64,000 nt of DNA from IMGVR_UViG_3300048672_001051:62001-126000, one strand, 5' to 3'; shown: positions 6,979-48,872, counted from the stretch's first letter. Numbers and translations: made by a program. Notes: generated from the letters alone by a model not told the origin.

Positions 6979-7005
6979 AGTTAATTTTTTTATTTAATTA
7001 TAAAT

Positions 7006-7035
7006 AAAACAGCCCGGTATTTCACAGGCTGTTTT
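7006..7035 (-). terminator. rho-independent terminator after ssb
   Basis: Inverted repeat AAAACAGCC...GGCTGTTTT; on the minus strand the stem is followed by TTTTATTTA. Confidence 0.7.
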
Positions 7036-7047
7036 TGTTAAAGCATA

Positions 7048-7683
7048 TTAGAACGGGCAGTCATCGTCATCATCAGAGCCTTGAGGTGCTGGTGTTGCCG
7101 CAAAAGAAGCTTCGACAGCTTTTGTAACGGCAGCAGCACCTGAAGCTTTTGCAGCTTCAGCCCACTCGTCACCGTTGTCTTTAGCTTCATACTCGATTAA
7201 GTCAGTTACTAGGATATGTTTTAATTTTGCAAAATCACCATAAGTATTAGAAATAATACTATAACGAGCTTTACCTCGAGAACCATTACCAACTAAAGTA
7301 GTTTCAGTAATATCCCGAATAGTACCAGAAGCATCTTGATGGAAAACGTGAGGGCGTAGTCCTTCAGGCATCGGAGTACCATCAGCCTTATTAACACTTT
7401 GTTTAAGTGTAATCAGGTACTGCAAAGGTTGAGACTCAAAAGGAACGTCAGTTTTGTATTTAGTCATGAACTCTTCGTTATCAATAACTTTCGCTTTTTG
7501 ACGAGGGTGCATCTTACTAAAAGCAGCTGCGTCTTCTTTAGTTAACGCAAGTGTTACTGAGTATTCTTTTTCAGTACTTTCAAACTTATTTTTTGGCTCT
7601 TTAATTGATGTGTAATAGAACACAGCATTGTCTAGTGGAATTGCTTGTTTTTTGTCAGTCATTGTTAAAAATCTATATAACAA
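7048..7683 (-). CDS. ssb: single-stranded DNA-binding protein
   Basis: Phage SSB-like VGNGSRGK motif, acidic C-terminal tail ending in an aromatic residue (SDDDDDCPF); lies next to the polymerase. True start probably the internal ATG (MTDKKQ). Confidence 0.75.
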   Translation of the reverse strand: MLYRFLTMTDKKQAIPLDNAVFYYTSIKEPKNKFESTEKEYSVTLALTKEDAAAFSKMHPRQKAKVIDNEEFMTKYKTDVPFESQPLQYLITLKQSVNKADGTPMPEGLRPHVFHQDASGTIRDITETTLVGNGSRGKARYSIISNTYGDFAKLKHILVTDLIEYEAKDNGDEWAEAAKASGAAAVTKAVEASFAATPAPQGSDDDDDCPF

Positions 7684-7786
7684 TTATTAATAGCATATGG
7701 TATATATTATATACCATATAAGTTGTTATGTACCCACGGTAGGAGTACACGATGAATGTCGTGCAGGTTAAACCTGCACCTCTCAA

Positions 7787-10700: not shown

Positions 10701-12360
10701 AGATTACGTTGTAGTTAAAGAAGTTTTAGGAGTTTCCAGCAATTAAGATTATTTTAAGTGGGCTTGTAAAGTCAACACCACTGTGCTTATACCTACCGGT
10801 AGAAGCCCCGATAGTGTCAGCTGGAGTAGGCACACGGCCATCCTCCCGAACCATAGACAAATATCCAGTTAGCGGCTCGCCAGATTCATCTTCACTGCCA
10901 CCTGCAATGCTTGCACGTCTATGTTTATAAGTAAGATACTTATTAACAGCACCGACAAACTCTGCATCAGCTCCAATCTTTTCTAAGTTTGGACATATAA
11001 CCTTTTCAGTACCAACACGTAAGCATGGGCCTGTAGGCACTCGTAGAGGCTTGTTAGGGCTTTGACGGTACTTAGCCATCAAGTCATACTTTAAAGACTG
11101 TGGCTTCGATTTGAGCAGCGCTAGACGAGCCTCTCGGAAAGGACCATTAAGAGTACTCTCAACATACCTATCAATTACTTCTACAACTTTATTAGGATGT
11201 AATTTTTGTTTCTTAGCGTCTTTAGTAACATCACGCTCTTTCCACTCAAATGGATCCCAGCCTAAAGTAATTAGATAAGCTTTTAAATGGTCTAAATCTT
11301 TGATAGTTGCAGTTGTTGTTTCTTTAACACAACCTTCATAAGGAAGTTGATATTCTTTATCTTCGAAAATGTAAACATTTTCATCAGTAATAGTACCACC
11401 ATGCTTTTCTGCAAATTTTAACATTATTGCAGACACTGAACCATCAGCTTTAAATTGACGTTTAGGTAAAGTATAAACTTTCTGTTCACCTTTATTTAAA
11501 CGCTTGTCTGGAAGTATAGGATTTACAAATTCTTCAATATCATGAAGAACTTTATCAAACTTTACTAAACAATCTTTAGCCTTTTCAGTATCATATTCAA
11601 AACCAAATAACTCTTGTTTTAAAGTAATATCTGCAAGTTTAATTTCCATCGCGTAAGCTTTACCCCAAGCCCAGCCATCTTTTTCAGATTCAAGTATATT
11701 ATAAATATCTATGTTTACAAGCGTATCTTGTAAACAATACGTAACCATCTTATAAGAATAATTTTCAAATTCGTGGAAATCGCCTTTATAATTACCAATC
11801 TGTTTACCCCAAGCGCCTAAGCCATGCCCGAATATACGGTCAGGATTTAGTAGCTTAGACCAAAGTAAAGTATCAGTAAATACTATAGGAGTACCGAAAA
11901 CTTTAGAGACAGTTTTATATTTAGAACCACCAGTATCTGGATACCCAACTTCATATTCAATCATGTCAAATAATTGAAGAGTTGGCATGTCAAATTTAAT
12001 ACCATTATGAAAAATTAATTCTTCTGGTTCAAATTTTTTAAAAAACTTTTCAAGGTTTTGTTTAGTTAACACTACTTTTTTAATTGAATTATAAAGTATA
12101 CCATCTTGATCTGGAACTATACGTTCAGCTAGACAACTTTTAATCTCATCGAAATAAGATTCAATTTTTGTAATAGGTGCTTTATAACTCATAAATTCTT
12201 TTGGAATAAAAGCAAAAGAATTTCTAGTGTCAACACAAGTAACCATAACGACATGTAGCTTAGCAGTCGGTTTTAAAGTGTACGGCATTGTAGCATATGA
12301 TAACATATTAGCTAGTAAATTGTTAGACTCTATGTCTAAAACAACTTTTTTGAACATCAA
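7787..12360 (-). CDS. polA: family A DNA polymerase, three exons (12360-10775, 10440-8871, 8050-7787), containing an intein
   Basis: Exo I LDIES, motif A DFASLEAR, motif B RDAAKSFTYAVLYG, motif C YH|DE restored by splicing. Joined exons total 3420 nt (1139 aa, 821 aa after intein removal). Confidence 0.93.
8051..8870 (-). mobile_element. group I intron (polA intron 2, 820 nt) with HNH homing endonuclease
   Basis: 5' splice site after ...TACCAT (U.G with guide GTGG); terminal G before GATGAA; P10 TTCATT/GATGAA; P ATTGACTGGAAAC, Q AATCAGCAGC, R GTTCAACGGCCA, S GATATGGTCT. Confidence 0.92.
8238..8723 (-). CDS. intron-encoded HNH homing endonuclease (I-HmuI-like)
   Basis: [37 protein letters not shown] motif. 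Confidence 0.9.
   Translation of the reverse strand: [161 protein letters not shown]
9291..10244 (-). mobile_element. intein in polA (318 aa) with LAGLIDADG-type endonuclease domain
   Basis: H|CFSEDTQILTSTGWK, block B VTPEH, LAVAVQADAY and QFWDG motifs, C-terminal FVSGN|C; removal restores NSIHCINARKLG. Confidence 0.92.
10441..10774 (-). mobile_element. group I intron (polA intron 1, 334 nt, no ORF)
   Basis: Splicing gives HSGV-CNVPRV; P10 TTACAA pairs with 3' exon TTGTAA; P ATTGCTGGAAAC, Q AATCAGCCAC, R CTCAGAGACTAG, S AAGATATAGTCC; ends in G. Confidence 0.92.
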
Positions 12361-18566: not shown

Positions 18567-19517
18567 TTAGAGTGCGCAAGCGCCGCTCTCACAGCCTGAA
18601 GCTGTTTTGTCAGAATCTTCTGCGGAGTCAGTATCTTCTTCAGCATCAGTATCCATTACTGTATAGTAACTAGTTTTCAAACCCATCTTAAAAAAATAAG
18701 CAAGTTCTGCTATAGACTCTCTTAAAGATCTAGTTTTTTTATCACCACGCATATCATAATAAGTATCTGCACTGATAGCTTGACCACAAAATTTTTGAAC
18801 GATTGCATAACAATCAATCATATCATAATAAGGAATATCATATCCAAATTCATAATAACTTTGTAAACGTTCGTACTCAGGTGCAATAAAAATATTCGTA
18901 TAACTGTTATCTGTTTTTACTAAAGTTGGTCTACGTATTGGGTAAAGACCGTTTGTACTATTAGTAGCCTTACTAGAAGCTTCACATGGCATGAAAGCCT
19001 CAAGAACACTAAAAGCAATACCACCTTGTGCAATTATGCCGGCACGTAAAGTTTCCCAATCATATCGTAATTCAAAATTAGCAATTCCATCAACATTTTT
19101 ATTATAAGTGTCAATAGGTAGCCAACCCTGAGGATACTTAGTCTTATGAATCCAGGGAGCATTGCCGTATTTTATTGCAATATCTAAAGCAGCTTTATGT
19201 AGAAAGTAACTATGTCTTTCAGCAATAAAGTGTAAAAATACTTTACCTTCTTTAGAAGTATAATATTTTTTATTACGAGCCATGCAATAAGCAAGATTAG
19301 TAACACCAATCCCTACAGACATTCTATTTTTAGTAGTATAACCTACACGCGGTAAAGTATATTCTGTACCTAAGATGACTGCTCGAGCAGTCATCAACAT
19401 TGTATAACATTTTTTGTAATACTCTTCGTCTGTATAATCTTTGTGTAGATTAATAGCGCCAATATTACAAATAGCAATTTCATTTTTAAATGATTTTGAA
19501 ATAATTTTCTTAGACAA
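18567..19517 (-). CDS. nrdA: ribonucleotide reductase alpha subunit, C-terminal part
   Basis: EIAICNIG, GIGVTNL, AFMPCEASS, LKTSYY, C-terminal CESGAC; TTG start with GGTGA 5 nt upstream. Confidence 0.88.
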   Translation of the reverse strand: MSKKIISKSFKNEIAICNIGAINLHKDYTDEEYYKKCYTMLMTARAVILGTEYTLPRVGYTTKNRMSVGIGVTNLAYCMARNKKYYTSKEGKVFLHFIAERHSYFLHKAALDIAIKYGNAPWIHKTKYPQGWLPIDTYNKNVDGIANFELRYDWETLRAGIIAQGGIAFSVLEAFMPCEASSKATNSTNGLYPIRRPTLVKTDNSYTNIFIAPEYERLQSYYEFGYDIPYYDMIDCYAIVQKFCGQAISADTYYDMRGDKKTRSLRESIAELAYFFKMGLKTSYYTVMDTDAEEDTDSAEDSDKTASGCESGACAL

Positions 19518-20997
19518 TTATGTCACCAACTTTAACATTTTCTACATTAATTTGTTCACCATTAACTTTTAAAATCTCTGAAGCATGTAATAGTTCTGAA
19601 CTACCATCATCATAAATAATTTCATAGTAATCAGCTTCATGAGTTTTAAATAAATCTTTGACGTGAAGCAAAGCTCCAGTAACTAGTGTTATCTCAACAC
19701 AAAGATTAGACATTTTAATAGGCTCAAGAAATGGAGTATGATGATTAACTTCATAACTATTAAACTTATACAGACGACCACTTTCAAAAGGTTCTTTAGC
19801 AATCAAAGCTGCAAGATTAACTGCTTTAATTAAAGTTTTAGGTACATCTGGATTATTTAAATATTTAAAATAAAGTTCTTTAAAACCTTCATAATCATCA
19901 GAATCAAATTTAGCATAAAGATCTGGTGCATGATAAAGACTAATAAGCATCCAAGGAGTTTTTGTATTTATAGCTTCAATTAAAAAAGGATGTAATTTAA
20001 TATTATAATCAATACCAGGAACTCTTCGAGATTCAATTGATTTTGGATTTCGAAGTTTGATAATAATTTCAATTTCAGGATCTAAACTAGATACATAAGT
20101 TGTTGCAGCACCACCCCGGCTATTTTGTTTATTAGCACCAACTAAAGATTGAAGAACTCTGAAATAAGGTAATTTGCCTTGATGTTCAATTGTACCTTTT
20201 TTAATTGGATCCATTAAGCTACGAACACCATAAAGTGAGCCTATTCCAGCGCCTGCAACAGTCATTGTAGAGACTGCATAAGACTTAGCATCAATAGAGT
20301 CAATAGCATCTTCACATTCAATTAAACAGCAACTAGCTCCAGTTTTATTTACAGTTCCAAGATAGACCATATTAGGTGAAGGTAAGTTAACATCATGACT
20401 AGAATAGTCTTCATAGTAAGAAATAATATCATTTAAAAAAGACTGATGATCATACGCCGACAATGTTGTTGAATTAGTGTAAGCTACATAAATTGCAACA
20501 CGCATGTAAGTAAATTGAGGAGTTTCGTATAACTTACTAGTAGCTACATCTTTAATAATATATTTATCTACAAGTTGTTTTAATACTGTATAAGTATAAG
20601 TATAATCTAACTGATGATTGATTTTAGATTCAATAAAGTCTAGATCACTATCAGACAAATTAAAATCTCGGTAAAACCCAAGATCAATCATTCTGTAATA
20701 CTGATCTTTAAAAGTAGCTACAATGTTATCTGGAAAAACATTCTTAATAATTATTGGAAGATATAACCTACCTGCTGCTTTAAGTGATTTATCAGTTTCG
20801 TATTCTAAGCAAGTTTTAATTAAAGCTTCTTGTAGTTGTACAGTAGTACATTTATCATATATTTTTTTAACAGCACGGAGTGATATATCACTCCAAATTG
20901 TATCGTTCTGATACGCGAATTCCATCCACTTATTTAATTTTAATGGATCAAACTCTTGCAGCGAGCCATCTCGCTTTACAATATGGTTTATTGTCAA
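19510..20997 (-). CDS. nrdA: ribonucleotide reductase alpha subunit, N-terminal part
   Basis: ATP cone VKRDG, ETPQF, PSP, ASCCL, SRGGA and the catalytic SNLCVE; stops after a Hint-like tail. Confidence 0.9.
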   Translation of the reverse strand: MTINHIVKRDGSLQEFDPLKLNKWMEFAYQNDTIWSDISLRAVKKIYDKCTTVQLQEALIKTCLEYETDKSLKAAGRLYLPIIIKNVFPDNIVATFKDQYYRMIDLGFYRDFNLSDSDLDFIESKINHQLDYTYTYTVLKQLVDKYIIKDVATSKLYETPQFTYMRVAIYVAYTNSTTLSAYDHQSFLNDIISYYEDYSSHDVNLPSPNMVYLGTVNKTGASCCLIECEDAIDSIDAKSYAVSTMTVAGAGIGSLYGVRSLMDPIKKGTIEHQGKLPYFRVLQSLVGANKQNSRGGAATTYVSSLDPEIEIIIKLRNPKSIESRRVPGIDYNIKLHPFLIEAINTKTPWMLISLYHAPDLYAKFDSDDYEGFKELYFKYLNNPDVPKTLIKAVNLAALIAKEPFESGRLYKFNSYEVNHHTPFLEPIKMSNLCVEITLVTGALLHVKDLFKTHEADYYEIIYDDGSSELLHASEILKVNGEQINVENVKVGDIIV

Positions 20998-40294: not shown

Positions 40295-42688
40295 TTAAAC
40301 ACATGAAGTATAATTAGCAACACTATTAAGAACTTGATAATGTTGCAATGCTTTTGTTGTAGTACCGGTAGAGCCGTAACGAGCAACATACGCTTGAGCT
40401 GCTGAAACATCTTCACCAGCTAAATGAGTGCGAATGATCTCTTGAACAGTCCGGTAATCATCAAGTGTACGAGAGGCTGACATATTTGAACCACTAATAA
40501 AAGTAACTTTTTTATGTGTGACAATTTCAGTCAAAACACATTGAAATAAGTTAGCTAGTAGTGACGCAGCAATATCATTGCCACTGAACATTTGCTCAGG
40601 ATTATCGTCAGTACCTCGAGCGTCTACCTCAGCACAGGATTCTATTTGAACTTCTTCAAAGTCGCTAAAAATATCTGCATGATCAATTGTATAATAATCA
40701 CGACCTAAACGGTTGTAATAAACTTGACCATTAAATAAATTAACGCCAGCAGAAAAATAGTAATTATTCCAGTTAAATGCTTCAGAATTAGCTGAGATAT
40801 ACAAATCTAATGCTTTTTTAAAACCTTCATTATCGACTAAATTCATAACATGACTTGTATTATCAATACCAATATCTTTGATATCAATAAATAAATCAAG
40901 ATCGCGATTTAGGTCAGCAGGATTTTCATAAGCAAATTCATCGTAGTCTGAATAGTAGCCAAACTTCGGCAAGTACGAAACAGTGATATTTTGATATAAA
41001 CCGTTGTAACGGTTTGACAAAACTTCAGCTTTGTTTAAGCCAATATCTGCTGAAATAAAGTTCTGCCGAAGCAAATTCTTTTGTTCCCATTTGTTACAAT
41101 TTGAAACTTAGATATTTATTATATTTTCTATCTAAAAAAATAGAAGAATCTTTGTACAATAAATCTAAGAATGTATTTACATTTTGCTTACCAGAAAGCG
41201 TTAAAGCATAACAGCAATTTTCAGTATTAAATCTTTTATATAATTTAGTATTAAATTTAATTGAACAATCAGCCTCAATTAAACTTTTAACTTCATTTAA
41301 AAAAGATTTAGTTCCAGCAATAGATGCACAGTAGCGCGTATAGCCATCCTTACATAAAGATTTAGACATACTGCCATCACCATCAAAGTAACCCCTAATA
41401 AAATGAATAAAAAATTCTTTTGGGATATTTGGAAACTTAAAATCTGTTGTTTTATTTCTGGTAAAACCAAGACTGCGTAATTTGCTAATCATGTGTAAGT
41501 TTGAAAAAGACAGCGAACAAACATTTGTTATTTTGCCAGTAAAGGTACATAACTGTGTAAATGTTTTAATTTTAACGTCACTTTTTAAACAAATTTTAAT
41601 TTTTTCTAAGATTTCAATATCTTTTGAGTTTAATGCAATTTTAAGCTCATAGTCACCGACGTAACCGTCAGCAGCAATAAATCCTAAAATGTAAGCTTTT
41701 TCCTCAGTATTTATGATATCAAAAAAATTATAATCTGCTTTAATAGTATTAAGCCAATCAACTGGCCTTTTAAAATTGTGTCTCTTAGCTAGTGCGTTTA
41801 CATTGACTAGGCTGCAGTTATATTTTATAGCTAACTCTGAAGTTGTCAGACCTTTATCATAATCTTTTAATAAATTTATTACGTCATTTTTAACATGAAA
41901 TAAACCTGCTTTGAATAAACGCCTTTCAGCAGTTTTTTCAGAACAATTTAAAATACGCATAACGTCATTTTTATCAATAAGATTTTTAAAAGAAAGACTT
42001 TTTAAAAGAGTTAACTCTTTAATAATAACATCTTGTTTAATTGGTAAGTACATTATTTTGACTCCTATAATTGTACAATGTGGCGAGACCACTATTGAGA
42101 AAAACAATCATATCAGACAAAATTTCAAACGTCAACCTCCTTTCTGTTCGGGGTTGAACTTTGGCTTGATATTATCTTTAAATAATACCTAGTGTATAAT
42201 ATGCCAAAGAGCAGACTATCGCATAAACTAATGTAATCCCTACATTAGTTTCTCTTTCGCTTAGTCGTTCACGGTGCCTTGAGTTTTAATAGATTTTTAA
42301 ATCTATCTCATGCTTCCGCCTTGTTGTCCTTATACTAGGAGTTCCAAGTCAATTAGAAAGAGTTTTATATCGTCCAACATTAAACGATATCGCCATCAAC
42401 AAGAATAATTTCAACTTTAAAGTTGTGACTACGTTTATGCAAAAGATCATTATAGATCTTTAACAGTTTTGGAAGAATCCAACTTGTAGTACCACCAGCG
42501 CCAAAAATAAATAACTTCTGATCTAAGTACTCCCGTGGAAGCTCTTTTGCATTTTTTAACAGACGAAGAAAAGCAAATTTATCTAACGCATCAATAGCTG
42601 AAATTTTTTCAGGTTGTACTGGACGATATTTAAGTGCACGAATCCACTGCGCCAGTGTGATTTGTTTTAAAATAGGTTCTACTTTCAT
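40295..42688 (-). CDS. ThiF/E1-like adenylyltransferase, two exons (42688-42383, 41086-40295), 365 aa
   Basis: FIFGAGGTTS nucleotide-binding loop; spliced VDGDIV|EQKNLLRQNF; NKAEVL; SCAE...EQ...NDIAA as in PRTRC-type ThiF. Confidence 0.9.
41087..42382 (-). mobile_element. group I intron (1296 nt) in ThiF gene
   Basis: P1 ATATCGTT/GACGATAT ending in U.G; P TTGACTTGGAAC, Q ACAAGGCGGAAG, R GTGAACGACTA, S GCGATAGTCT; terminal G before GAACAA; reading frame restored. Confidence 0.9.
41094..42053 (-). CDS. intron-encoded double-motif LAGLIDADG homing endonuclease
   Basis: YILGFIAADGY and FIRGYFDGDGS; likely start MYLPIKQ with AGGAG upstream. Confidence 0.88.
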   Translation of the reverse strand: MYLPIKQDVIIKELTLLKSLSFKNLIDKNDVMRILNCSEKTAERRLFKAGLFHVKNDVINLLKDYDKGLTTSELAIKYNCSLVNVNALAKRHNFKRPVDWLNTIKADYNFFDIINTEEKAYILGFIAADGYVGDYELKIALNSKDIEILEKIKICLKSDVKIKTFTQLCTFTGKITNVCSLSFSNLHMISKLRSLGFTRNKTTDFKFPNIPKEFFIHFIRGYFDGDGSMSKSLCKDGYTRYCASIAGTKSFLNEVKSLIEADCSIKFNTKLYKRFNTENCCYALTLSGKQNVNTFLDLLYKDSSIFLDRKYNKYLSFKL

Positions 42689-42731
42689 ATTAAATCTTAT
42701 TTATTTAAATTGAATAAAAGCAACACTGAAA

Positions 42732-45700
42732 TCAGTGTTGCGTGACTAAAGCGTTGTGATAGCTGTCTATCAAGAATTTCGCCTCTTCGGCAGGATCCAT
42801 ACTGTCATACGGTACGTCATCATCAACTACAATAATGCTAGAATTTTCTGCATCAGGCGCAGAAAAAATGTCTTGCTCAGAACCGACAGCCAGAAGACCT
42901 TGATTGAAAAAGTGACTTAATTCATTCAATTGATCTTCTGTAAAAGCTGTTTGATAGCCAACAATATCTAACAAAGTTGTAAACAAGTCTACAATTTCGT
43001 CCATGTTTAGTGGTACAGAAGTTTTAGCGTAATAAGGCGTAGGCAACAAACGTCCCAACAACTTCTCAAACTCTTGCAGTAACCGGTGCTGTTGAGTATC
43101 AATAGCCCAAAGAGTTAAATAGACACTTAACGGCTGATATCTTGGATAAACCGGTGGAACATATGGTTTACCTTTACCAGCAGGTGGTGTATAACCAAGA
43201 GCACCAACTGACTTATTGTACGAAGCAATTTCAACAATTTTATCTTCAGAGCCAGCAGGTACACTGTAATCAGAATCTTCTTGAAGTTTTTCAATATCGC
43301 GATCAAAAATATCGTTAACTTTCAAAACAACTTGTTGTTGATTTGAAGCAGCACGAACAACAATTTCAGGGACTTCATTACTAAGCTTACCAATAACGCC
43401 AAACAAACGAGAAGCCTTCTCGTCGTTTAAATCACCACCACTGAAGAATGCCATAATATTCAATACAGATCGTTAATCTGTACCCGCACCTATTAAAGAT
43501 GCTGCTTATACTTTCATATAAGAGTAGACTATATCTTCTTTCAGTTTAAACTGAAAGCTCTCCATTTCCACCCACTTGGGTGTACGATACTCGATTCATT
43601 CAAAAAGAATGTCTTTCTCTAGTCGTTGAACTTTTACCGTAGAATAAATTCTTTAGGTACTTAGCTGCTGATTATCCAATTCTATTAATTTTCAAACATT
43701 CACACTTATCTTTTCAGATTATGTTGTAGTTTAATAGACTCTTATGAATTAATAATACAATCTAATACATATTTTTCTGTAATTAATTTTTTATAAATAA
43801 TTCTAACTAATTTAATATTATTATCTAAACAATATTGATTTTTAATCTCATCACATTCTTTTGAATATTCTGAGTACCATATATGATTTTCATCATAATG
43901 TTGTAACCCATCCGCTTCAATCATAAGATTTTTAGAGGGGATATAAAAATCAATCCTTAAAGGGTATCCTTTAGGAGATAATAATTTTTCATTAGTATAT
44001 TCACAAATAATATTATTATAATTAGCACTTAATGCATTATAAATATTATTTTCAAAGTTAGAATTACTTTTAAAAAATCCTAGCATATTATTTAAATTAC
44101 ACATTGAAATTTTTAATTTAGTTAAAGTTTTATTAGATCTTTTAATAGTGTTAATAATTTCACTATTAGTACAATATCTATTCTTACTTAAAATAAATTC
44201 TAAAATTTCTTTTTCTACTACCTCTTTAGTTAATTCTTCAGAGGATCTTCGAGCTTTTGCTGCACAAGATTTTGAGCAAAATATGGTATTAAGTGTATAC
44301 TTAGTGCCATACTGCATATTAGTGTATAAATTTAAATATTCTTTATTACAGAATTTACATATTTTTTTATTACTTTTCATATCCTATTTCCAATTATATT
44401 TTAATTTCTGCTATTAAAAAGCATTAATATAATTATAATTGAAAGACTTATCAAAGTCGAGGAAAGGAACTTCCAGCAATTAGAAGAGTTTTACATGAGC
44501 ACATTTAAGCTTTACTCATATCTACATGCGACATTGTAGATGTGTTATGAATTGTTTTTTAATATACAATTCCTTGACAAGAATTTCTTTGTAATATAAA
44601 CTTTACGTCATTACACCATGACTATATAAGTCAAAATTTTACGACATAAAGCAGGTACATTAAAATTTGTTAAAACTAGAAAAATACAAAGACTATATTA
44701 TAACAAATATAGCGCAAAACAAACCAATTAGCATAATAGCTAAAGAGTTAAATGAATACCCTCAAGCAGTTAGAAACGTAATAAAAAAATACTTACCTGA
44801 TAAAAAATTTATACATGATCAGGGAAATATTTCTTATTTTAATAAAATAGACTGTGATGCTAAAGCATACTTTATAGGCTTCATTGCTGCAGATGGATCA
44901 CTAGTAAAACGTAAAAGTGATAATAGCATAGCATTAAGTATAACTATCAATAAAAAAGATAAATTAATACTAGATACTTTAAAAAATTGTATAGGTTGTG
45001 AAAATCCTGTAAGTTTTTTAAAATTAAATGATTTAGTAAGGTTTGTTATACAAAACAAACAAATATCAGATGATCTACAAACTTACGGAATTGAGCCTAA
45101 CAAATCTTTAACTATGCCGTCAATTATTCATAAAATACCGAAAGAATACAGAAAAGCATTCTTAAGAGGTTATTTTGATGGCGATGGTAGTGTATTCAAA
45201 AGTTCTAAAAACAAATATTATGTAACTATAAGAGGCACGTTAGAATTTTTACAAGCATACATAGAAGAGTTTAATTTAAGTTCGTATTCGTTAAAAAAAT
45301 ACGATTACGAAAAAATTGGGAAATTAACAACAGGGTCTAAAGACTCTATTAAAAAATTTATAACTATGTATGAAAATTCTGAAATACACTTACAAAGAAA
45401 ACATGAAATATTTTTAAATTTCATGGAAAAACATTGTCAAGATCAGACTATCTCATCACCCTAGTTTAACTAGGGTGTGCGGCACTCGTGTCGGTCTTAT
45501 TGGACTAGATCCTCAACCGTTAGTCGTTACACCCAACTGACTACTTTTACTCTATTCGTCAGTCTTGGCACGGTATTGTCCTTTTTCTAGGAGTTTCACC
45601 GTTAGCATTAACTATATTAGTTAACACACCCTTTTCAGGTTCACCGCATTATTCAATTAGCATTACTGCTAAAGGCCACTCGCTTTTAATGGATATCCAT

Positions 45701-46111
45701 AACGATGAAAAAGTTTGAATTGTTAAGCATCGCAGGATCATTTTGAAAATTAACTGTAGCCCCACCAACACGTTGTTCAGGCACATACAGAAAATAGTCT
45801 TGCTTTGCAATATCCCAATAAATTGAGATATACACTTCTGATCGCATCTTATTTTTAATAACGCGGAAAAATTCAACGATATTAGTAAGAAGTGCGACGG
45901 GAATTTTCGGAAGTGCAGAAACGTAGCTAACTTCACAAGTTTGATTAAGACCTAAACGCTTTAGGTCAATCTTATCAATTTGAATAGTAAAAGTGCCTAC
46001 AGGCTCTTTACGACGTTGCCAAATACCATTAGCAAAAGCAGCGTTTGAGAACTTTTTAGTTTCATCAAAACATTCTACTGTAAAGCCATTTAAATCAGGA
46101 AACATACTCAT
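42732..46111 (-). CDS. JAB/MPN metalloprotease (PRTRC protein A-like), three exons (46111-45689, 44531-44514, 43451-42732), 386 aa
   Basis: Spliced sequence reads ...SEV...VPEQ...MDIH|SHVDMS|AFFSGGDLNDE, the canonical E...HSH...S..D JAB motif. Confidence 0.9.
43452..44513 (-). mobile_element. group I intron B of JAB gene (1062 nt)
   Basis: P1 ATGAGT/GCTCAT; P10 AATGT/GCATT; P ATTGCTGGAAG, Q AATCAGCAGC, R GTTCAACGACTAG, S AAGATATAGTCT; ends ...ATTATG. Confidence 0.92.
43742..44380 (-). CDS. intron-encoded Vsr/EDxHD-like homing endonuclease
   Basis: CKFC...FCSKSC zinc motif; RIDFYIPSKNLMIEADGLQHY...DEIKNQYC. Confidence 0.8.
   Translation of the reverse strand: MKSNKKICKFCNKEYLNLYTNMQYGTKYTLNTIFCSKSCAAKARRSSEELTKEVVEKEILEFILSKNRYCTNSEIINTIKRSNKTLTKLKISMCNLNNMLGFFKSNSNFENNIYNALSANYNNIICEYTNEKLLSPKGYPLRIDFYIPSKNLMIEADGLQHYDENHIWYSEYSKECDEIKNQYCLDNNIKLVRIIYKKLITEKYVLDCIINS
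44574..44602 (+). promoter_or_regulatory. sigma70-like promoter for the antisense endonuclease
   Basis: TTGACA (44574-79), 17 nt, TAAACT (44597-602), 65 nt upstream of the plus-strand ORF. Confidence 0.65.
44667..45464 (+). CDS. LAGLIDADG homing endonuclease, antisense within intron A
   Basis: YFIGFIAADGSL and FLRGYFDGDGSV; homologous to the 41094-42053 enzyme. Confidence 0.88.
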   Translation: MLKLEKYKDYIITNIAQNKPISIIAKELNEYPQAVRNVIKKYLPDKKFIHDQGNISYFNKIDCDAKAYFIGFIAADGSLVKRKSDNSIALSITINKKDKLILDTLKNCIGCENPVSFLKLNDLVRFVIQNKQISDDLQTYGIEPNKSLTMPSIIHKIPKEYRKAFLRGYFDGDGSVFKSSKNKYYVTIRGTLEFLQAYIEEFNLSSYSLKKYDYEKIGKLTTGSKDSIKKFITMYENSEIHLQRKHEIFLNFMEKHCQDQTISSP

Positions 46112-46959
46112 TGGAAAAATCTACCTACACGGGTTAGTTCATTACGAGTTATATTACGTAAAAAATTTTGGGATGGGCTTGGCAATACATTGTATTGATA
46201 ATACATGTAAATATAAGACATTTCATTTAATCGCAAATGAGCTTCATTTGTAAAAAAGTCTGGTCTGAAAACAGTTTGAAGAAAATCTTTAAATCCAGGC
46301 GTAGAATTTACTAGATCTCTACCTACAGCCACGTTAGGATCTAAATCTGTATTAAACAAACTGCTTAAGTACAAACGTACAAAACCTGCTTGGTCTGCTG
46401 GTGAAGTAGAATTCAAAACAGCTTGTGCTGTGTCTGCAATGTCATGAGGCCAACAAATTTTATCACTGTAGTGATTATTAAATACACTTTTATGATATTT
46501 TGTTTCGTCTGTAACATTTAAACTCAAGCCTGTCATTTCAGCAAAACAGACATTATAACTAATAAAATTTCGAGAAGCATTATTGTTTGAAATAATAAAA
46601 CCTAAAATATTTTTAAATTTAAATGCTGGAAAGTTTAATGCATGACGATTACCAACACTGTGCACTTTAAAGTGATCGTTTGGTATTAGATACTGACTAA
46701 TCGTATCAACTGAGTTACCAGCAAAATTCAAAGCTACAGTCAATTCTGGATAGTGAAACAAACGTTTAATTCGTGATTCTAAAATGACTTCACGAATTAA
46801 GTTTGTACCAATATATCCAGAGTCTTTACGAGAAACTTTCTGTGCACCAAAAAAGTCAACAATATCTGTATAAGGAATTTGTTTTGTAATTTGACGGCCT
46901 TGCTCTTCAGTGGTAACTGCAACATGAGTAGCTTGTGGAATATATTTAAAAGTAATCAT
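46108..46959 (-). CDS. prokaryotic E2-like protein (Prok-E2 family D / PRTRC protein B-like)
   Basis: YHKSVFNNHYSDKICWP and YLSSLFNTDL patterns; lies between Ubl and JAB. Confidence 0.65.
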   Translation of the reverse strand: MITFKYIPQATHVAVTTEEQGRQITKQIPYTDIVDFFGAQKVSRKDSGYIGTNLIREVILESRIKRLFHYPELTVALNFAGNSVDTISQYLIPNDHFKVHSVGNRHALNFPAFKFKNILGFIISNNNASRNFISYNVCFAEMTGLSLNVTDETKYHKSVFNNHYSDKICWPHDIADTAQAVLNSTSPADQAGFVRLYLSSLFNTDLDPNVAVGRDLVNSTPGFKDFLQTVFRPDFFTNEAHLRLNEMSYIYMYYQYNVLPSPSQNFLRNITRNELTRVGRFFQ

Positions 46960-47318
46960 AAGTATTGTGAACTCTGAAGTGGGGCGCTAAGCGAAGCTTT
47001 AAAAAATGTCTTAAATTCTAAAAAGTAACTTAAAGGAATAACGACACGATCAGTTTCTGCATCTAATGCCTGCAGAAACTGCGTAAGATTTTGATTACTA
47101 GGTTGAAATGCAGAAAAATGCGAATAAGCCGCAGCTTTATCTGCCCGACATCTGCGAAAAAAATCAACTAAATTTTGAAAATTAGTATCAACAACGCCAG
47201 CAGAATTTACAAAATTTTGTAAATTATCATAAAAAATATTGAGCGGTGTAGGTTCGTTATTAGATTGTAATTGGTCTTGGATATTCATAGACGTAATATT
47301 TCTCAGAGTTAGGTACAA
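46956..47318 (-). CDS. hypothetical protein within the Ubl module
   Basis: ORF; likely start MNIQDQL. Confidence 0.5.
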   Translation of the reverse strand: MYLTLRNITSMNIQDQLQSNNEPTPLNIFYDNLQNFVNSAGVVDTNFQNLVDFFRRCRADKAAAYSHFSAFQPSNQNLTQFLQALDAETDRVVIPLSYFLEFKTFFKASLSAPLQSSQYL

Positions 47319-47859
47319 CAGTCAAGGGGACTATAGTCAACCGCGGACCATCTGTAACGTTGCCAGTATTTGCTACTTTAAAATAGCTACCAGCAGAATC
47401 TTTTATGGCAATTCTTTGGCTCATAAATACAGCTAAGAAGTCTTCAGTCTTTGTATGAATAGCAAATTCAAGATAAAGGCTAGGACATAACTGATCGGGA
47501 GTTACGTTAAAAGTGCTACACAAACCATTTTCAAAAGATTTGTAACGTTCTAAAGGGTACAAAAGCAATTGATTTAATAAAGTTGCTTCTAGAGTTTCAT
47601 TTAAGCTAAATACGAAGTTTTTAAAACTAGTACCTAATTGTAAATAATACTCAGGTTTTACTAAAGGTTCTACAGTTGATTTATTATGAATTATAGATAA
47701 ATATTTTTCATAATTAATATGTTCAACTACAGTTTTAACCCACTCTACAAATTTCTGTTTTTTTATATTATCTAAATTTTGACAATATCTATAAAGAATA
47801 TAACCTTTTAATTCGTACATAATAATTTCTTTGGCAGTATAAAAAGGTTGAGGTTGCAC
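47260..47859 (-). CDS. hypothetical protein within the Ubl module
   Basis: ORF; likely start MYELKG at about 47819. Confidence 0.5.
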   Translation of the reverse strand: MQPQPFYTAKEIIMYELKGYILYRYCQNLDNIKKQKFVEWVKTVVEHINYEKYLSIIHNKSTVEPLVKPEYYLQLGTSFKNFVFSLNETLEATLLNQLLLYPLERYKSFENGLCSTFNVTPDQLCPSLYLEFAIHTKTEDFLAVFMSQRIAIKDSAGSYFKVANTGNVTDGPRLTIVPLTVVPNSEKYYVYEYPRPITI

Positions 47860-47871
47860 TCGTGCAACCTC
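47850..47871. terminator. hairpin downstream of the Ubl gene
   Basis: GAGGTTGCAC-TC-GTGCAACCTC perfect 10-bp stem. Confidence 0.55.
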
Positions 47872-47895
47872 ACTAGCTAAGCTTTCGCCAGCTTA

Positions 47896-48108
47896 TTACG
47901 CAGCGTTTTTAGTGCCGGTAGGGATGGTAAATGTTAGAACATTTACACCGTTAACAACGTTAACAACAGGTGTAGCATTACGCAATTCTGCGTAAGTGCC
48001 CGACAATTCAGTCTTAATTTGTTCTGGGGTGTAACCAGTAACAGTAGAGTTGATGCCGCCAGCTGGGTATTGAACTTGGTAAACAGTTTGAGTGAACATA
48101 GTAGTCAT
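47896..48108 (-). CDS. ubiquitin-like protein (PRTRC protein C-like)
   Basis: 70 aa; TPEQIKTELSGTYAELRNA and C-terminal LTFTIPTGTK match the Prok_Ub pattern; ends GTKNAA. Confidence 0.75.
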   Translation of the reverse strand: MTTMFTQTVYQVQYPAGGINSTVTGYTPEQIKTELSGTYAELRNATPVVNVVNGVNVLTFTIPTGTKNAA

Positions 48109-48201: not shown

Positions 48202-48447
48202 TTAACGAATCTGAGACGCGATAGTAAGCAGTGAGTTTACAGCAGTTTGCAAAGTTTCAGCAAGTTGAGTCAATTGAACAGCAGCTGGGTTATTAACACC
48301 AGGCGATTGCAGTTGACTTAAAATGTTAGAAGTTTGCGGGGGAGTTGGCGCTTGAACACCAGCCATGAGTTGAGGACCAAGAGCTGGGATAGGCTCTGGA
48401 ATAACTCCGGGTTGGTTGCCTTGGCGCAACTGGGTCATAATATCCAT
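48202..48447 (-). CDS. Pro/Gln-rich low-complexity protein
   Basis: 81 aa; disordered-looking N-terminus and helical C-terminus. Confidence 0.6.
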   Translation of the reverse strand: MDIMTQLRQGNQPGVIPEPIPALGPQLMAGVQAPTPPQTSNILSQLQSPGVNNPAAVQLTQLAETLQTAVNSLLTIASQIR

Positions 48448-48452: not shown

Positions 48453-48872
48453 TTAAAGTATCAGTTGGTTACGAGCATCTGAGACTGGGCTACAAATATA
48501 CGAGTCGTTTTGGCTCATAAGTGTTGCACGGTCTTCAGGACAATTTGCATTATGGTCGTTAATAAAATCTTGAATAACAGCAGTATTCAAAGCTTTATGA
48601 CCAATAACACGAGTTACGCGTGAGATAACTTTTAAGCGACCAACTTCAGAATAAGGTATAAATCCATGAAATTTATAACTATTCTTGTTAATGCTTAAAT
48701 CATTATTTACACAGTTAAGACGTAGTAAATAAATACCATGCTTAACGTTATCTTTGGCTGCAACAACGTAGTCGTGACCACGAGGATGATGCCAAATACG
48801 TACAACTGTTCCAAGTGTCAAACGACTACTAGGAATTTCAGATTGGACGATAGTAGAAACTGCAGATGTCAA
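48453..48872 (-). CDS. hypothetical protein
   Basis: 139-aa ORF. Confidence 0.55.
   Translation of the reverse strand: MTSAVSTIVQSEIPSSRLTLGTVVRIWHHPRGHDYVVAAKDNVKHGIYLLRLNCVNNDLSINKNSYKFHGFIPYSEVGRLKVISRVTRVIGHKALNTAVIQDFINDHNANCPEDRATLMSQNDSYICSPVSDARNQLIL

What the first reader, a model, noticed from the sequence alone, without database searches (positions are those of the whole stretch)
40295..48108. Complete phage-encoded ubiquitin-like conjugation module (Ubl, E2, JAB, E1) hidden by three group I introns
The ORF track shows only fragments here. Splicing by hand restores a ThiF/E1 (GAGGTTS; DGDIV|EQKNLLRQ; SCAE) and a JAB peptidase (H|SHVDMS|AFFS..D..DE). They lie in one minus-strand cluster with an E2-D-like protein (NNHYSDKICW) and a 70-aa Ubl (LTFTIPTGTK..). 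Established: this gene set matches PRTRC cassettes, whose function is unresolved, and bacterial E1/E2/JAB/Ubl systems act in anti-phage defence (CBASS Cap2/Cap3, Bil). Inference: the phage runs its own protein-conjugation pathway, perhaps tagging host or phage proteins or countering host Ubl defences. Homing introns usually persist in conserved, functionally important sites, so their presence suggests these genes are under selection. No ParB gene is seen in this window.
Basis: partly seen in the sequence, partly recalled or inferred. Interest (0 to 1): 0.92.

Follow-up and report, generated by a model that had tools for sequence, protein, structure and literature searches.

The report
Intron-split ubiquitin-like tagging genes in phage
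A giant bacteriophage carries a six-gene cluster that looks like a complete ubiquitin-style protein-tagging kit (tag, E2-like, JAB protease, E1), with the active-site codons of two enzyme genes split by three self-splicing-type introns; the kit is common in large phages and has never been studied.

Summary
On the minus strand of 40295-48108 lie a 70-aa Ubl-like gene, two small unknown genes, a 283-aa E2-like gene, a JAB/JAMM peptidase gene in three exons and a ThiF/E1 gene in two exons. The three insertions are group I introns. They give Rfam hits (all below the curated threshold), have a U.G pair at each 5' splice site and a terminal G, and form P1/P10 pairings. Intron-free relatives align across every junction without gap or overlap.

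E1 and JAB identities are solid. The E2-like assignment rests on profile-profile similarity to Prok-E2_D/PRTRC_B and an invariant Asn...Cys; a confident structure model found no solved E2. The Ubl call is weaker.

The closest known system is the PRTRC cassette (Iyer 2006 class 6d), but every component scores below family cut-offs and no ParB was seen.

The cassette is not unique. It occurs in Acinetobacter jumbo phage ME3, in Bacillus jumbo phages and in many large metagenomic contigs, often split at the same sites.

Protein conjugation by the phage is the best-supported mechanism, but it is inferred. Targets and biological role are unknown.

The parts
47896..48108 (-). Ubl-like gene (70 aa). 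Invariant Gly65-x-Lys67 is followed by a short variable tail.
   Evidence: ORF. The only NCBIfam hit is PRTRC_C, E 0.054. 11 of 15 family members hit PRTRC_C and no other family recurs. AF2 model has pLDDT 79, strand-strand-helix-helix-strand-strand order and a disordered tail at 66-70. 70/70 aa are identical to L003 despite 14 synonymous codon changes. Foldseek was not significant.
47260..47859 (-). Conserved 199-aa gene of unknown function. It may correspond to the fast-evolving helical partner of class 6d operons.
   Evidence: ORF. No Pfam, PHROG, NCBIfam or PADLOC hit. Positional homologs of 91-199 aa occur in L003, ME3, L010, L012, L015, L016 and L017.
46956..47318 (-). Conserved small gene of about 100-120 aa with unknown function. 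Its start is uncertain because the ORF overlaps the end of the previous gene.
   Evidence: ORF, alignment. No family hit. The same position is occupied in all relatives.
46108..46959 (-). E2-like gene (283 aa), a divergent relative of Prok-E2_D / PRTRC protein B. Asn161 and Cys168 are invariant.
   Evidence: The family has 32 representatives. Invariant residues are D45, G47, L53, R55, N161, C168, W169, Y196, N202 and D204. hhalign against 5 Prok-E2_D-type proteins gives 94.7%, E 6e-8, over 168 columns. 21 metagenomic ORFs hit both HMMs. AF2 pLDDT is 89. There is no PDB fold match and no Pfam hit.
45689..46111 (-). JAB peptidase exon 1 (141 aa). It ends with the first His of the JAMM motif and contains the conserved Glu92.
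   Evidence: It aligns to residues 168-237 of an uninterrupted Prok-JAB protein (L006), E 2e-5.
44532..45688 (-). Group I intron 1 (1157 nt).
   Evidence: Rfam RF00028 at 45698-45423, 48.8 bits, E 3e-10. P1 pairs CCAU with GUGG, with U.G at the splice site. P10 pairs GCGA with UCGC. The last base is G. The intron is absent at this site in L010, L015 and L016.
44667..45464 (+). LAGLIDADG homing-endonuclease gene (265 aa) on the antisense strand, inside intron 1.
   Evidence: ORF. It is 95% identical in DNA to L003, where the product hits PF14528 LAGLIDADG_3. L017 has the same arrangement.
44514..44531 (-). JAB micro-exon (6 codons, SHVDMS) carrying the second His of the JAMM motif.
   Evidence: In L003 it is continuous with exon 3.
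43452..44513 (-). Group I intron 2 (1062 nt).
   Evidence: Rfam RF00028 at 43729-43505, 43.3 bits, E 1.3e-8. P1 pairs AUAUGAGU with GCUCAUGU, P10 pairs AAUGU with GCAUU, and the last base is G. The site is empty in L003. An ORF-less homologous intron sits at the same site in L010. The core matches intron cores in phages phiR1-37, LPJP1 and the Lactococcus AM phages.
43742..44380 (-). Intron-2 endonuclease gene (212 aa).
   Evidence: PHROG 559 'HNH endonuclease' E 3e-20, phrog_9084 'homing endonuclease', phrog_7140 'intron encoded nuclease'. Weak Pfam DUF5889 hit.
42732..43451 (-). JAB exon 3 (239 aa). It starts AFFSGGD, which supplies the Ser and Asp of the JAMM motif.
   Evidence: Weak PRTRC_A hit to profile positions 146-187.
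42383..42688 (-). E1 (ThiF-family) exon 1 (102 aa) with the nucleotide-binding loop GAGGTTS and DGDIV.
41087..42382 (-). Group I intron 3 (1296 nt).
   Evidence: Rfam RF00028 at 42392-42199, 30.6 bits, E 1.4e-5 when searched alone. P1 pairs AUAUCGUU with GACGAUAU, P10 pairs UGUU with AACA, and the last base is G. The site is empty in ME3, L010, L015 and L016. The core is 88-91% identical to L003, which carries a different endonuclease gene at a different place in the intron.
41094..42107 (-). Intron-3 LAGLIDADG homing-endonuclease gene (337 aa).
   Evidence: Pfam LAGLIDADG_3, 42.6 bits. phrog_4645 endonuclease, E 6e-50.
40295..41086 (-). E1 exon 2 (263 aa) with KNLLRQ, NKA, VDNE, the conserved Cys in SCAE, and DNPEQ.
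   Evidence: 43.8% identical to ME3 gp130, E 3e-48. That protein hits Pfam ThiF at 59.2 bits.

Best explanation
The region is a six-gene, co-oriented operon-like cassette of a roughly 230-kb jumbo phage. It encodes a PRTRC-related ubiquitin-like conjugation pathway. Two of its genes are interrupted by mobile group I introns.

Shown:
- The E1 and JAB reading frames are restored only by removing three group I introns. The introns sit inside the most conserved catalytic motifs: the ATP-binding D-x-D-x-V | E-x-K-N-L-x-R-Q of E1, and the H | S-H-x4 | A-F-F-S-x-x-D zinc site of JAB.
- All catalytic residues are intact.
- The exons are under purifying selection.

Inferred mechanism:
1. After splicing, JAB trims the short variable tail of the 70-aa Ubl, probably after the invariant Gly65.
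2. E1 adenylates the new C-terminus and takes it onto the conserved Cys of its S-C-A-E loop.
3. The Ubl passes to the invariant Cys168 of the E2-like protein.
4. The Ubl is then joined to lysines of unknown phage or host targets. JAB can also reverse this.
5. The two small fast-evolving proteins between Ubl and E2 are candidate specificity or adaptor factors.

The introns are selfish passengers. They home into the conserved motifs, and their patchy distribution among relatives reflects repeated gain and loss rather than regulation.
For: Introns and junctions:
- Searches give Rfam hits, P1 with U.G, a terminal G and P10.
- Searches show collinearity with intron-less homologs.
- Searches show a patchy distribution. 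The same sites are split in 8 (E1) and 3 (JAB) further metagenomic loci.

E1:
- Uninterrupted orthologs pass Pfam ThiF: 59.2, 36.9 and 41.0 bits against a cut-off of 28.1.
- The best NCBIfam model is PRTRC_ThiF, up to 56 bits.
- GxGG, DxDxV, KNxxRQ, NKA, VDN and the Cys are all conserved.

JAB:
- The joined exons give an exact JAMM motif.
- The exons align to L006 JAB, which passes Prok-JAB at 34.3 bits.
- PRTRC_A hits are collinear across the pieces.

E2-like:
- hhalign to Prok-E2_D/PRTRC_B gives 94.7%, E 6e-8.
- Asn and Cys are invariant in 33 sequences.
- 21 bridging ORFs hit both HMMs.
- Foldseek links the model to the ME3 protein and to a 241-aa entry, the length of Bacillus phage WH1 gp214.

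Ubl:
- PRTRC_C is the only recurrent hit, in 11 of 15 members.
- The predicted topology is compatible with a beta-grasp, with a flexible tail.
- There are zero non-synonymous against 14 synonymous differences to L003, while neighbouring genes are 57-96% identical.

Cassette:
- Gene order is conserved in ME3, L003, L010, L015, L016 and L017.
- JAB lies upstream of E1 in 73 of 80 metagenomic loci, and an E2 is present in 47 of 80.

Precedent for tail trimming: Type II BilA Ubls have a conserved Gly followed by up to nine variable residues that the JAB enzyme BilC removes (PMC10557695).
Against: - No biochemical evidence exists for any member of this cassette or for PRTRC itself.
- The confident E2-like model (pLDDT 89) has no significant match to any solved structure, including UBC/E2. 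A profile search of PDB sequences found nothing.
- The Ubl model gives only a non-significant top match, the protein L B1 domain at E 0.2. hhalign to one PRTRC_C is weak, E 0.011.
- The Ubl C-terminus is not Gly-Gly, and the residue after the tail varies among G, V, A, AA, or nothing after KN. Lys67, two residues after the proposed cut site, is invariant, which a simple throw-away tail does not explain.
- No E3-like protein or target is identifiable.
- Splicing is predicted, not observed. All three cores score below Rfam's gathering threshold.
Confidence: 0.6

Rival explanations
1. The same enzymes act as a weapon in phage-phage or phage-host conflict rather than in the phage's own life cycle. 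One version is a Bil-like system that tags the virion proteins of co-infecting phages. The other is an anti-defence device that saturates, mimics or reverses host Ubl-based immunity (Bil, CBASS Cap2/Cap3, Bub).
For: - Bacterial E1/E2/JAB/Ubl operons act in anti-phage defence (PMC10097602, PMC10557695, 10.1101/2023.09.04.556158).
- Jumbo phages carry defence-like systems, for example the Ter system in ME3 (PMC7824862).
- The E1 gives a weak PADLOC hit to the CBASS E1-E2 model.
- The two small partner proteins evolve fast, at 57-75% identity, which fits arms-race specificity factors.
Against: - The cassette sits in a conserved position among replication and nucleotide-metabolism genes. Its order is kept across distant relatives, like a core module rather than an accessory island.
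- No PADLOC Bil/ISG15-like model matches.
- The Ubl is invariant, not diversifying.
Confidence: 0.2
2. The Ubl and E1 form a sulfur-carrier or adenylation system of the ThiS/MoaD-ThiF/MoeB type. It would serve cofactor, nucleoside or DNA modification, with JAB only maturing the carrier. No protein conjugation takes place.
For: - ME3's E1 was annotated as a thiamine-biosynthesis ThiF.
- Secondary NCBIfam hits go to ThiF, MoeB and TcdA models.
- The cassette lies among nucleotide-metabolism genes.
- JAB plus ThiS/MoaD-like operons exist in sulfur assimilation (PMC1779556).
Against: - The best E1 model is PRTRC_ThiF, not ThiF or MoeB.
- An E2-like protein with an invariant Cys is always present in this phage clade.
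- No rhodanese, cysteine desulfurase or sulfur-insertion enzyme is in the cassette.
- The Ubl lacks the Gly-Gly end typical of sulfur carriers.
Confidence: 0.1
3. The interrupted JAB and E1 genes are decaying pseudogenes disrupted by selfish insertions. The cassette would then be non-functional in this phage.
For: - All three intron cores score below Rfam's gathering threshold.
- Intron 1 has about 890 nt between the core and the 3' splice site, plus an antisense gene. This could impair splicing.
Against: - The exons keep open frames and every catalytic residue.
- Exon identity to L003 is 83-96% for E1 and 89% for JAB exon 1, with many synonymous changes.
- P1 and P10 pairings are exact at each junction.
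- The same split arrangement persists in several diverged phages.
Confidence: 0.04

Closest known systems
PRTRC cassette (ParB-related, ThiF-related cassette; NCBIfam TIGR03734-03742), equal to operon class 6d of Iyer, Burroughs and Aravind 2006 (PMC1779556)
   Same: - The parts list is the same: a small Ubl (protein C), an E2-like Prok-E2_D (protein B), a JAB with an extra N-terminal domain (protein A), a ThiF-type E1 with a conserved Cys, and fast-evolving helical partners.
- The order E2-JAB-E1 is the same.
- PRTRC models are the best or only NCBIfam hits for E1, JAB and Ubl.
- The function of both is untested.
   Different: - Every component scores far below the curated cut-offs: 56 against 145 bits for the best orthologous E1, 24 against 102 for JAB, and 14 against 46 for Ubl.
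- The E2-like protein has no Pfam or NCBIfam hit at all.
- No ParB partner was found.
- The carrier is a lytic-type jumbo phage rather than a plasmid or ICE.
- The genes are split by group I introns.
- The Ubl ends G-x-K-N plus 0-2 residues instead of G-T-K-G.
BilABCD (Type I and II) and CBASS Cap2/Cap3 bacterial Ubl-conjugation defence systems
   Same: - The logic is the same: E1 adenylation and thioester, an E2 cysteine, a JAB protease, and a Ubl or Ubl-like C-terminus.
- Type II BilA has a conserved Gly followed by a variable tail that the JAB enzyme removes. This is the model for the G-x-K-N tail here.
   Different: - No PADLOC Bil/ISG15-like hit. Only a 14.5-bit hit to the CBASS E1-E2 model.
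- The E1 here is a short single adenylation domain without the inactive domain or the helical Cys domain described for BilD.
- It is encoded by the virus, not by the host.
E2_D-JAB-ThiF clusters of Bacillus jumbo phages vB_BauM_KLEB27-3 and vB_BceM_WH1, and of Alicyclobacillus plasmid p1
   Same: - Same order E2-JAB-E1, and phage or phage-like carriers.
- Pfam Prok-E2_D, Prok-JAB and ThiF hits.
- A BFVD entry of 241 aa, the length of WH1 gp214, matches the E2-like model by Foldseek at E 6e-8.
   Different: - Only about 25% identity in E1.
- No separate small Ubl was recognised. In the Alicyclobacillus protein a Prok_Ub-like domain is fused to JAB.
- No introns were seen.
Multi-intron phage genes: T4 td/nrdB/sunY, SPO1-type DNA polymerase, Staphylococcus phage Twort orf142 with three group I introns (from my own knowledge, not checked here)
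   Same: - Group I introns with homing-endonuclease genes inserted in the most conserved codons of essential genes.
- Patchy distribution among relatives.
- A micro-exon between two introns.
   Different: - The host genes are Ubl-pathway enzymes rather than DNA or nucleotide-metabolism genes.
- One endonuclease gene is antisense.
- The ME3 intron at the same site carries tRNA genes instead of an endonuclease gene.

Membership tests
Group I intron (Rfam RF00028) | Covariance-model score at or above the gathering threshold (50 bits) | tested here: not met
   Scores are 48.8, 43.3 and 30.6 bits. E-values in the local searches are 3e-10, 1.3e-8 and 1.4e-5, and each match covers the full model. The default scan finds none of the three.
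Group I intron (Rfam RF00028) | P1 helix with a U.G pair at the 5' splice site, terminal G at the 3' end, and P10 pairing with the 3' exon | tested here: met
   All three 5' exons end in U paired to G, all three introns end in G, and P10 of 4-5 bp lies directly 5' of P1. In intron 3 the P10 is offset by one base.
Group I intron (Rfam RF00028) | Precise removal restores a frame collinear with intron-less homologs | tested here: met
   The pieces were aligned separately and abut exactly.
Group I intron (Rfam RF00028) | Self-splicing with guanosine cofactor | not testable with these tools
   Needs in-vitro transcription and a splicing assay, or RT-PCR.
ThiF/E1 adenylating enzymes (Pfam PF00899) | Pfam ThiF score above the gathering threshold | tested here: met
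   The window pieces alone fail, with exon 2 at 12.6 bits. Uninterrupted orthologs pass: ME3 59.2 bits, L010 36.9 and L015 41.0, against a cut-off of 28.1. Window exon 2 is 43.8% identical to ME3.
ThiF/E1 adenylating enzymes (Pfam PF00899) | Nucleotide-binding Gly loop, D-x-D-x-V...N-L-x-R-Q, Lys, D-N and a catalytic Cys | tested here: met
   GAGGTTS, DGDIV|EQKNLLRQ, NKA, VDNE and SCAE are all conserved with PRTRC ThiF and the Bacillus-phage E1s.
JAB/JAMM (MPN+) metallopeptidase (Pfam Prok-JAB PF14464) | E...H-x-H-x7-S-x2-D zinc-site motif | tested here: met
   Glu92 lies in exon 1. H|SHVDMS|AFFSGGD spans the three exons.
JAB/JAMM (MPN+) metallopeptidase (Pfam Prok-JAB PF14464) | Pfam Prok-JAB score above threshold (25 bits) | tested here: inconclusive
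   No hit for the window pieces. The intron-free ortholog L015 scores 18.9 bits. The more distant L006 scores 34.3 bits and aligns to the window pieces at E 2e-5 and 7e-9.
E2/UBC superfamily (Prok-E2_D PF14460 / PRTRC protein B) | Sequence-profile membership | tested here: inconclusive
   None of 33 family members has a Pfam hit. hhalign to 5 Prok-E2_D-type proteins gives 94.7%, E 6e-8. 21 metagenomic ORFs hit both HMMs.
E2/UBC superfamily (Prok-E2_D PF14460 / PRTRC protein B) | Catalytic Cys preceded by a conserved Asn (counterpart of the HPN motif) | tested here: met
   N161 and C168 are invariant in 33 sequences. The consensus is FPNHFxxxICW, which aligns with FSNxYxxxLCW of Prok-E2_D proteins.
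E2/UBC superfamily (Prok-E2_D PF14460 / PRTRC protein B) | UBC fold | tested here: not met
   The AF2 model has pLDDT 89 and pTM 0.78. Foldseek against the PDB gives best E 0.04 with TM below 0.12 and no E2. The order helix, beta-meander, Cys loop, helices is compatible with UBC, but that is only my reading.
Ubiquitin-like beta-grasp / PRTRC protein C (TIGR03738, Pfam Prok_Ub) | Family model above cut-off | tested here: not met
   13.6 bits against a cut-off of 45.95. 11 of 15 relatives hit PRTRC_C, best E 0.0078, and it is the only recurrent family. No Pfam Prok_Ub hit.
Ubiquitin-like beta-grasp / PRTRC protein C (TIGR03738, Pfam Prok_Ub) | Beta-grasp fold | tested here: inconclusive
   The model has pLDDT 79 with the order strand, strand, helix, short helix, strand, strand. 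The top Foldseek hit is the protein L B1 domain, E 0.2, not significant.
Ubiquitin-like beta-grasp / PRTRC protein C (TIGR03738, Pfam Prok_Ub) | C-terminal Gly available for adenylation | tested here: inconclusive
   Gly65 is invariant but is followed by x-K-N and 0-2 variable residues. Exposing it would need processing.
PRTRC system as a whole | ParB-family partner gene in the cassette | tested here: inconclusive
   None of the cassette ORFs, and none of 10 large ORFs elsewhere in the window, has a ParB domain. Not every ORF of the window was scanned.
BilABCD / CBASS Cap2-Cap3 defence systems | Match to PADLOC system models | tested here: not met
   The only hit is 14.5 bits to the 'E1-E2' model, for E1 exon 2.

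The most novel reading that the evidence does not exclude
A widespread clade of jumbo phages runs its own complete E1-E2-Ubl-JAB conjugation pathway as a core part of infection. Its Ubl is as sequence-constrained as ubiquitin and marks host or phage proteins. This would be the first virus-encoded full ubiquitin-like conjugation cascade in the bacterial world. It would also give the first functional handle on the unexplained PRTRC/6d cassettes of plasmids and ICEs.
Probability: 0.4. Interest if true: 0.85.

Novelty: new variant of a known kind. Interest (0 to 1): 0.62.

Why it matters
Ubiquitin-like conjugation in bacteria has so far been tied to host defence (CBASS Cap2/Cap3, Bil, Bub). Here the same kind of machinery sits on the virus side. 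It lies in a conserved position among replication genes. It recurs in cultured jumbo phages (Acinetobacter ME3, Bacillus KLEB27-3 and WH1) and in many large metagenomic contigs.

The papers I searched do not discuss it, including a 2021 comparative review of 224 jumbo phages. The function of its closest relative, the PRTRC/6d cassette described in 2006, is still unknown.

Because cultured phages carry it, the question becomes directly testable: what does a phage tag with its own Ubl?

There is also a practical lesson. Gene callers and default Rfam and Pfam scans miss the two enzymes, because introns cut through their signature motifs. Such modules are therefore under-counted. ME3's JAB is annotated only as a 144-aa fragment.

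Tried and rejected
Searches that gave nothing useful:
- Pfam, PHROG, NCBIfam and PADLOC scans of the separate window pieces gave no above-threshold hit for Ubl, the 199-aa gene, the 120-aa gene, E2-like, JAB or E1.
- phmmer of the E1 pieces against PDB sequences gave only noise. Profile searches of PDB with the E2-like and Ubl families gave nothing and spurious ribosomal L28 hits respectively.
- Megablast against GenBank phages matched only an 80-nt intron core.
- Single-protein scans of IMG/VR returned only the source contig. The profile scan added only ME3.
- A word-indexed search with the Vibrio PRTRC_B protein returned only 2 sequences and was wasted.
- hhalign of a 3-sequence E2-like profile against 2 Prok-E2_D proteins was not significant, E 0.15. 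It became significant only with deeper profiles.
- Foldseek of both models against the PDB gave no significant fold match.
- A scan of 185,579 GTDB species genomes with two E1 peptide patterns found no relative.

Readings considered and rejected:
- The antisense LAGLIDADG gene is free-standing between two genes. Rejected because the JAB micro-exon lies downstream of it.
- The micro-exon is a chance ORF. Rejected because it is continuous with exon 3 in L003, and with exon 1 in L010 and L016.
- Membership in Bil or CBASS. Rejected because there are no model matches.

The pieces were searched apart and compared with natural intron-free homologs.

Full report
SOURCE AND SETTING

The window is part of IMG/VR contig IMGVR_UViG_3300048672_001051, 229,656 bp. 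It has no close relative among GenBank phages. Megablast of the region matched only about 80 nt of an intron core in phages phiR1-37, LPJP1 and the Lactococcus AM phages. The surrounding genes are on the same strand. They encode replication and nucleotide-metabolism functions: family-A DNA polymerase, primase-helicase, RecQ, RNR, ligase and an SbcC-like ATPase. In the syntenic relative L003 they include RuvC, RecA and ThyA. The cluster therefore sits in the DNA-metabolism block of a jumbo phage.

CHECKING THE OBSERVATION

The minus strand of 40295-48108 carries these ORFs in order:
- 70 aa
- 199 aa
- 120 aa
- 283 aa
- 141 aa, ending ..VMDIH followed by a stop
- 243 aa, containing AFFSGGD near its start
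- 102 aa, ending ..DGDIV followed by a stop
- 259 aa, preceded in frame by EQKN

Three endonuclease-type ORFs lie in the gaps. Reading the sequence and a script check give these coordinates:
- JAB exon 1: 46111-45689
- Intron 1: 45688-44532 (1157 nt)
- Micro-exon: 44531-44514 (SHVDMS)
- Intron 2: 44513-43452 (1062 nt)
- JAB exon 3: 43451-42732
- E1 exon 1: 42688-42383
- Intron 3: 42382-41087 (1296 nt)
- E1 exon 2: 41086-40295

The joined JAB exons read H|SHVDMS|AFFSGGD. This is exactly the JAMM motif H-x-H-x7-S-x2-D. The joined E1 exons read DGDIV|EQKNLLRQ, which is the ThiF ATP-site motif.

ARE THEY GROUP I INTRONS?

A default Rfam scan finds none of the three. It finds only a fourth intron at 10491-10837. 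With E-value reporting, all three cores match RF00028 over the full model:
- 45698-45423: 48.8 bits, E 3e-10
- 43729-43505: 43.3 bits, E 1.3e-8
- 42392-42199: 30.6 bits, E 1.4e-5, when searched alone

Each 5' exon ends in U, and that U pairs with G in a P1 helix:
- Intron 1: CCAU with GUGG
- Intron 2: AUAUGAGU with GCUCAUGU
- Intron 3: AUAUCGUU with GACGAUAU

Each intron ends in G. The bases directly 5' of P1 pair with the first bases of the 3' exon to form P10: GCGA with UCGC, AAUGU with GCAUU, and UGUU with AACA. For intron 1 this pins the micro-exon boundary, even though about 890 nt and an antisense gene separate the core from the 3' splice site.

NATURAL EMPTY SITES

I therefore searched the pieces separately and looked for uninterrupted homologs.
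- L003, the only close relative (Logan contig, 78 kb), has introns 1 and 3 but lacks intron 2. There the DNA runs continuously through SHVDMSAFFSGGD.
- L015, a 227,621-bp contig, has an intron-free cassette. The window's three JAB pieces abut on its 349-aa JAB without gap or overlap.
- Acinetobacter jumbo phage vB_AbaM_ME3 has an uninterrupted 350-aa E1, gp130. Window exon 1 ends at its ..DHDEV, and exon 2 starts at the next residue, ETKNIIRQ.

Occupancy of the sites is patchy:

| Site | Occupied | Empty |
|---|---|---|
| J1 (H\|SH) | window, L003, L009, L017, ME3 | L010, L015, L016 |
| J2 (before AFF) | window, L010 (ORF-less intron), L016, L017 | L003, L015 |
| E1 site | window, L003, L017 | ME3, L010, L015, L016 |

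- ME3 has an intron six codons downstream of J2.
- Intron 3 of the window and of L003 share an 88-91% identical core. They carry different endonuclease genes at different places in the intron.
- Among 80 metagenomic loci, 8 more have E1 split at exactly ..D-x-D-x-V | E-x-K-N. Three more have JAB split inside the JAMM motif.

This is the expected picture for homing introns.

WHAT THE PROTEINS ARE

E1
- Window exon 2 is 43.8% identical to ME3 gp130, E 3e-48.
- Uninterrupted orthologs pass Pfam ThiF: 59.2, 36.9 and 41.0 bits against a cut-off of 28.1.
- Their best NCBIfam model is PRTRC_ThiF, at 56 and 45 bits against a cut-off of 145.
- The Gly loop, DxDxV, KNxxRQ, NKA, VDN and a Cys in S-C-A-E are conserved with PRTRC ThiF and the Bacillus-phage E1s.

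JAB
- Exon 1 aligns to residues 168-237 of an Alicyclobacillus plasmid protein, E 2e-5.
- The micro-exon plus exon 3 aligns from residue 238 onward, E 7e-9.
- That protein passes Pfam Prok-JAB at 34.3 bits.
- PRTRC_A hits to the two parts of the L010 ortholog cover profile positions 53-151 and 148-191, so they are collinear.

E2-like protein
- No Pfam, PHROG, NCBIfam or PADLOC hit.
- An exhaustive HMMER search found 32 cluster representatives. None has a Pfam hit.
- N161 and C168 are invariant. The consensus is FPNHFxxxICW.
- hhalign against five proteins was used as the profile test. These encode the gene just upstream of JAB and E1 in a Vibrio PRTRC cassette (Prok-E2_D, 79 bits), its V. rotiferianus homolog (named PRTRC system protein B), the Alicyclobacillus plasmid (26 bits), and Bacillus phages KLEB27-3 (21 bits) and WH1. 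The result was 94.7% probability, E 6e-8, over 168 columns, with the Asn and Cys aligned.
- In the metagenomic loci, 21 ORFs are hit by both HMMs. This bridges the two families.
- The AF2 model is confident, with pLDDT 89 and pTM 0.78. Foldseek found no solved structure; the best was E 0.04 with TM below 0.12.
- In BFVD, Foldseek found only the ME3 protein, a 241-aa entry of the same length as WH1 gp214, and one uncultured-phage protein.
- My conclusion is that the protein is homologous to Prok-E2_D. A UBC fold is not shown.

Ubl
- Its only NCBIfam hit is PRTRC_C, E 0.054.
- 11 of 15 relatives give that same hit, best E 0.0078, and no other family recurs.
- hhalign to a single PRTRC_C is weak, E 0.011.
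- The AF2 model has pLDDT 79 with two strands, a helix, a short helix and two strands, followed by a disordered tail. Foldseek is not significant; its top hit is the protein L B1 domain.
- The protein is 70/70 identical to L003 despite 14 synonymous codon changes. Neighbouring genes are 57-96% identical. This is ubiquitin-like constraint.
- All 15 homologs end G-x-K followed by N or A and 0-2 variable residues.

CONTEXT AND SPREAD

The order Ubl, about 90-200 aa, about 80-120 aa, E2-like, JAB, E1 is kept in ME3, L003, L010, L015, L016 and L017.

ME3's record already names gp326 'PRTRC system protein A' and gp130 'ThiF'. It annotates no introns. gp326 is only JAB exon 1. The ME3 genome announcement mentions none of this.

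Bacillus jumbo phages KLEB27-3 and WH1 carry E2_D-JAB-ThiF clusters.

A JGI/ENA metagenome scan found at least 202 stretches encoding related E1s. Of the 80 kept:
- 73 have JAB just upstream.
- 47 have a recognisable E2.
- 8 have a Ubl detectable with my narrow profile.
- 12 lie on contigs of 100-460 kb.

No relative was found in 185,579 GTDB species genomes with two E1 peptide patterns. A 2021 comparative review of 224 jumbo phages does not mention JAB, ThiF or a Ubl system. No paper I could find links PRTRC to a function or to phages beyond annotation.

MECHANISM

Shown:
- The gene set.
- Intact catalytic motifs.
- Purifying selection.
- Intron anatomy.

Inferred from family knowledge:
- E1 adenylates the Ubl C-terminus and forms a thioester on the S-C-A-E cysteine.
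- The Ubl moves to Cys168 of the E2-like protein and then to target lysines.
- JAB matures the Ubl and reverses conjugation.

Type II BilA offers a precedent. It has a conserved Gly followed by up to nine variable residues that the JAB enzyme BilC removes (PMC10557695). By analogy I propose cleavage after Gly65. The invariance of Lys67 is not explained by this.

[quoted passage not shown] They may act as specificity factors.

Terminator-like hairpins follow the Ubl and JAB stop codons. The first could raise Ubl mRNA relative to the enzyme mRNAs. This is speculative.

Targets and role are unknown. The role could be the phage's own cycle, competition with other phages, or counter-defence.

COMPARISON AND VERDICT

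The cassette works like, and is distantly related to, the PRTRC/6d cassette. It fails every curated PRTRC cut-off and lacks a visible ParB, so I do not file it as a PRTRC member. It is not a Bil or CBASS system by PADLOC models.

I rate it a new variant of a known kind: a phage-borne, intron-invaded branch of the PRTRC-type Ubl machinery.

Its functional reading is reasonable but untested. Its sense of uniqueness is overstated, because cultured phages already carry partly annotated versions. The interest lies in three points: the module is widespread in jumbo phages, it is unstudied, and it can now be tested in ME3 or the Bacillus phages.

Noticed in passing
window 10491-10837 (-), flanked by ORFs 10726-12360 and 8832-10496: A fourth group I intron, the only one above Rfam's threshold at 62.8 bits. 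It splits what looks like a family-A DNA polymerase gene. The downstream ORF carries a LAGLIDADG_3 domain followed by the DNA_pol_A C-terminal part.
   Followed up: partly
L004 (phage ME3, NC_041884) 6027-6694, between JAB exon 1 and the micro-exon: The ME3 intron at the same site as window intron 1 starts and ends like it. Instead of an endonuclease gene it contains tRNA-Met(CAT) at 6235-6312. ARAGORN also calls a tRNA-Leu(TAG) at 6331-6429. These would be tRNA genes lodged inside a group I intron of a protein-coding gene.
   Followed up: partly
window 44667-45464 (+); also L003 12149-12946 and L017 11822-12502: The LAGLIDADG homing-endonuclease gene of intron 1 is on the strand opposite to the intron and its host gene, in three different phages. 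It lies in the roughly 890-nt stretch between the intron core and the 3' splice site.
   Followed up: partly
L004 (ME3) about 6731-8057: ME3's second JAB intron (Rfam 81 bits at 6721-7057) sits six codons downstream of the window's intron 2 site: AFFSSV|DLKDE rather than S|AFFSGG. This looks like an independent insertion into the same zinc-site motif.
   Followed up: partly
window 47849-47872 (-) and 42720-42741 (-): Terminator-like hairpins with 10-bp and 9-bp stems and a T-run lie directly after the Ubl stop codon and after the JAB stop codon. They may act as attenuators setting Ubl-to-enzyme ratios. The count in the region is 7, against 3.8 +/- 2.0 in shuffles.
   Followed up: no
window 19510-20997 (-): The ribonucleotide reductase large-subunit ORF is only 495 aa. 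It matches only the first 219 of 523 positions of the barrel-domain model, so this gene is probably interrupted as well.
   Followed up: no
window 48202-48447 (-) and 48453-48872 (-): Two genes sit just upstream of the Ubl. One is an 81-aa Pro/Gln-rich low-complexity protein. The other is a 139-aa protein that is 91% identical in L003. Both are syntenic in L003 and have no family hits. They may or may not belong to the cassette.
   Followed up: partly
L006 (Alicyclobacillus sp. TC plasmid p1) 4895-5836: In this phage-like plasmid the JAB protein carries an N-terminal Prok_Ub-like segment (20 bits, residues 49-86). The Ubl appears to be fused to its protease, as in some class 6 operons.
   Followed up: no
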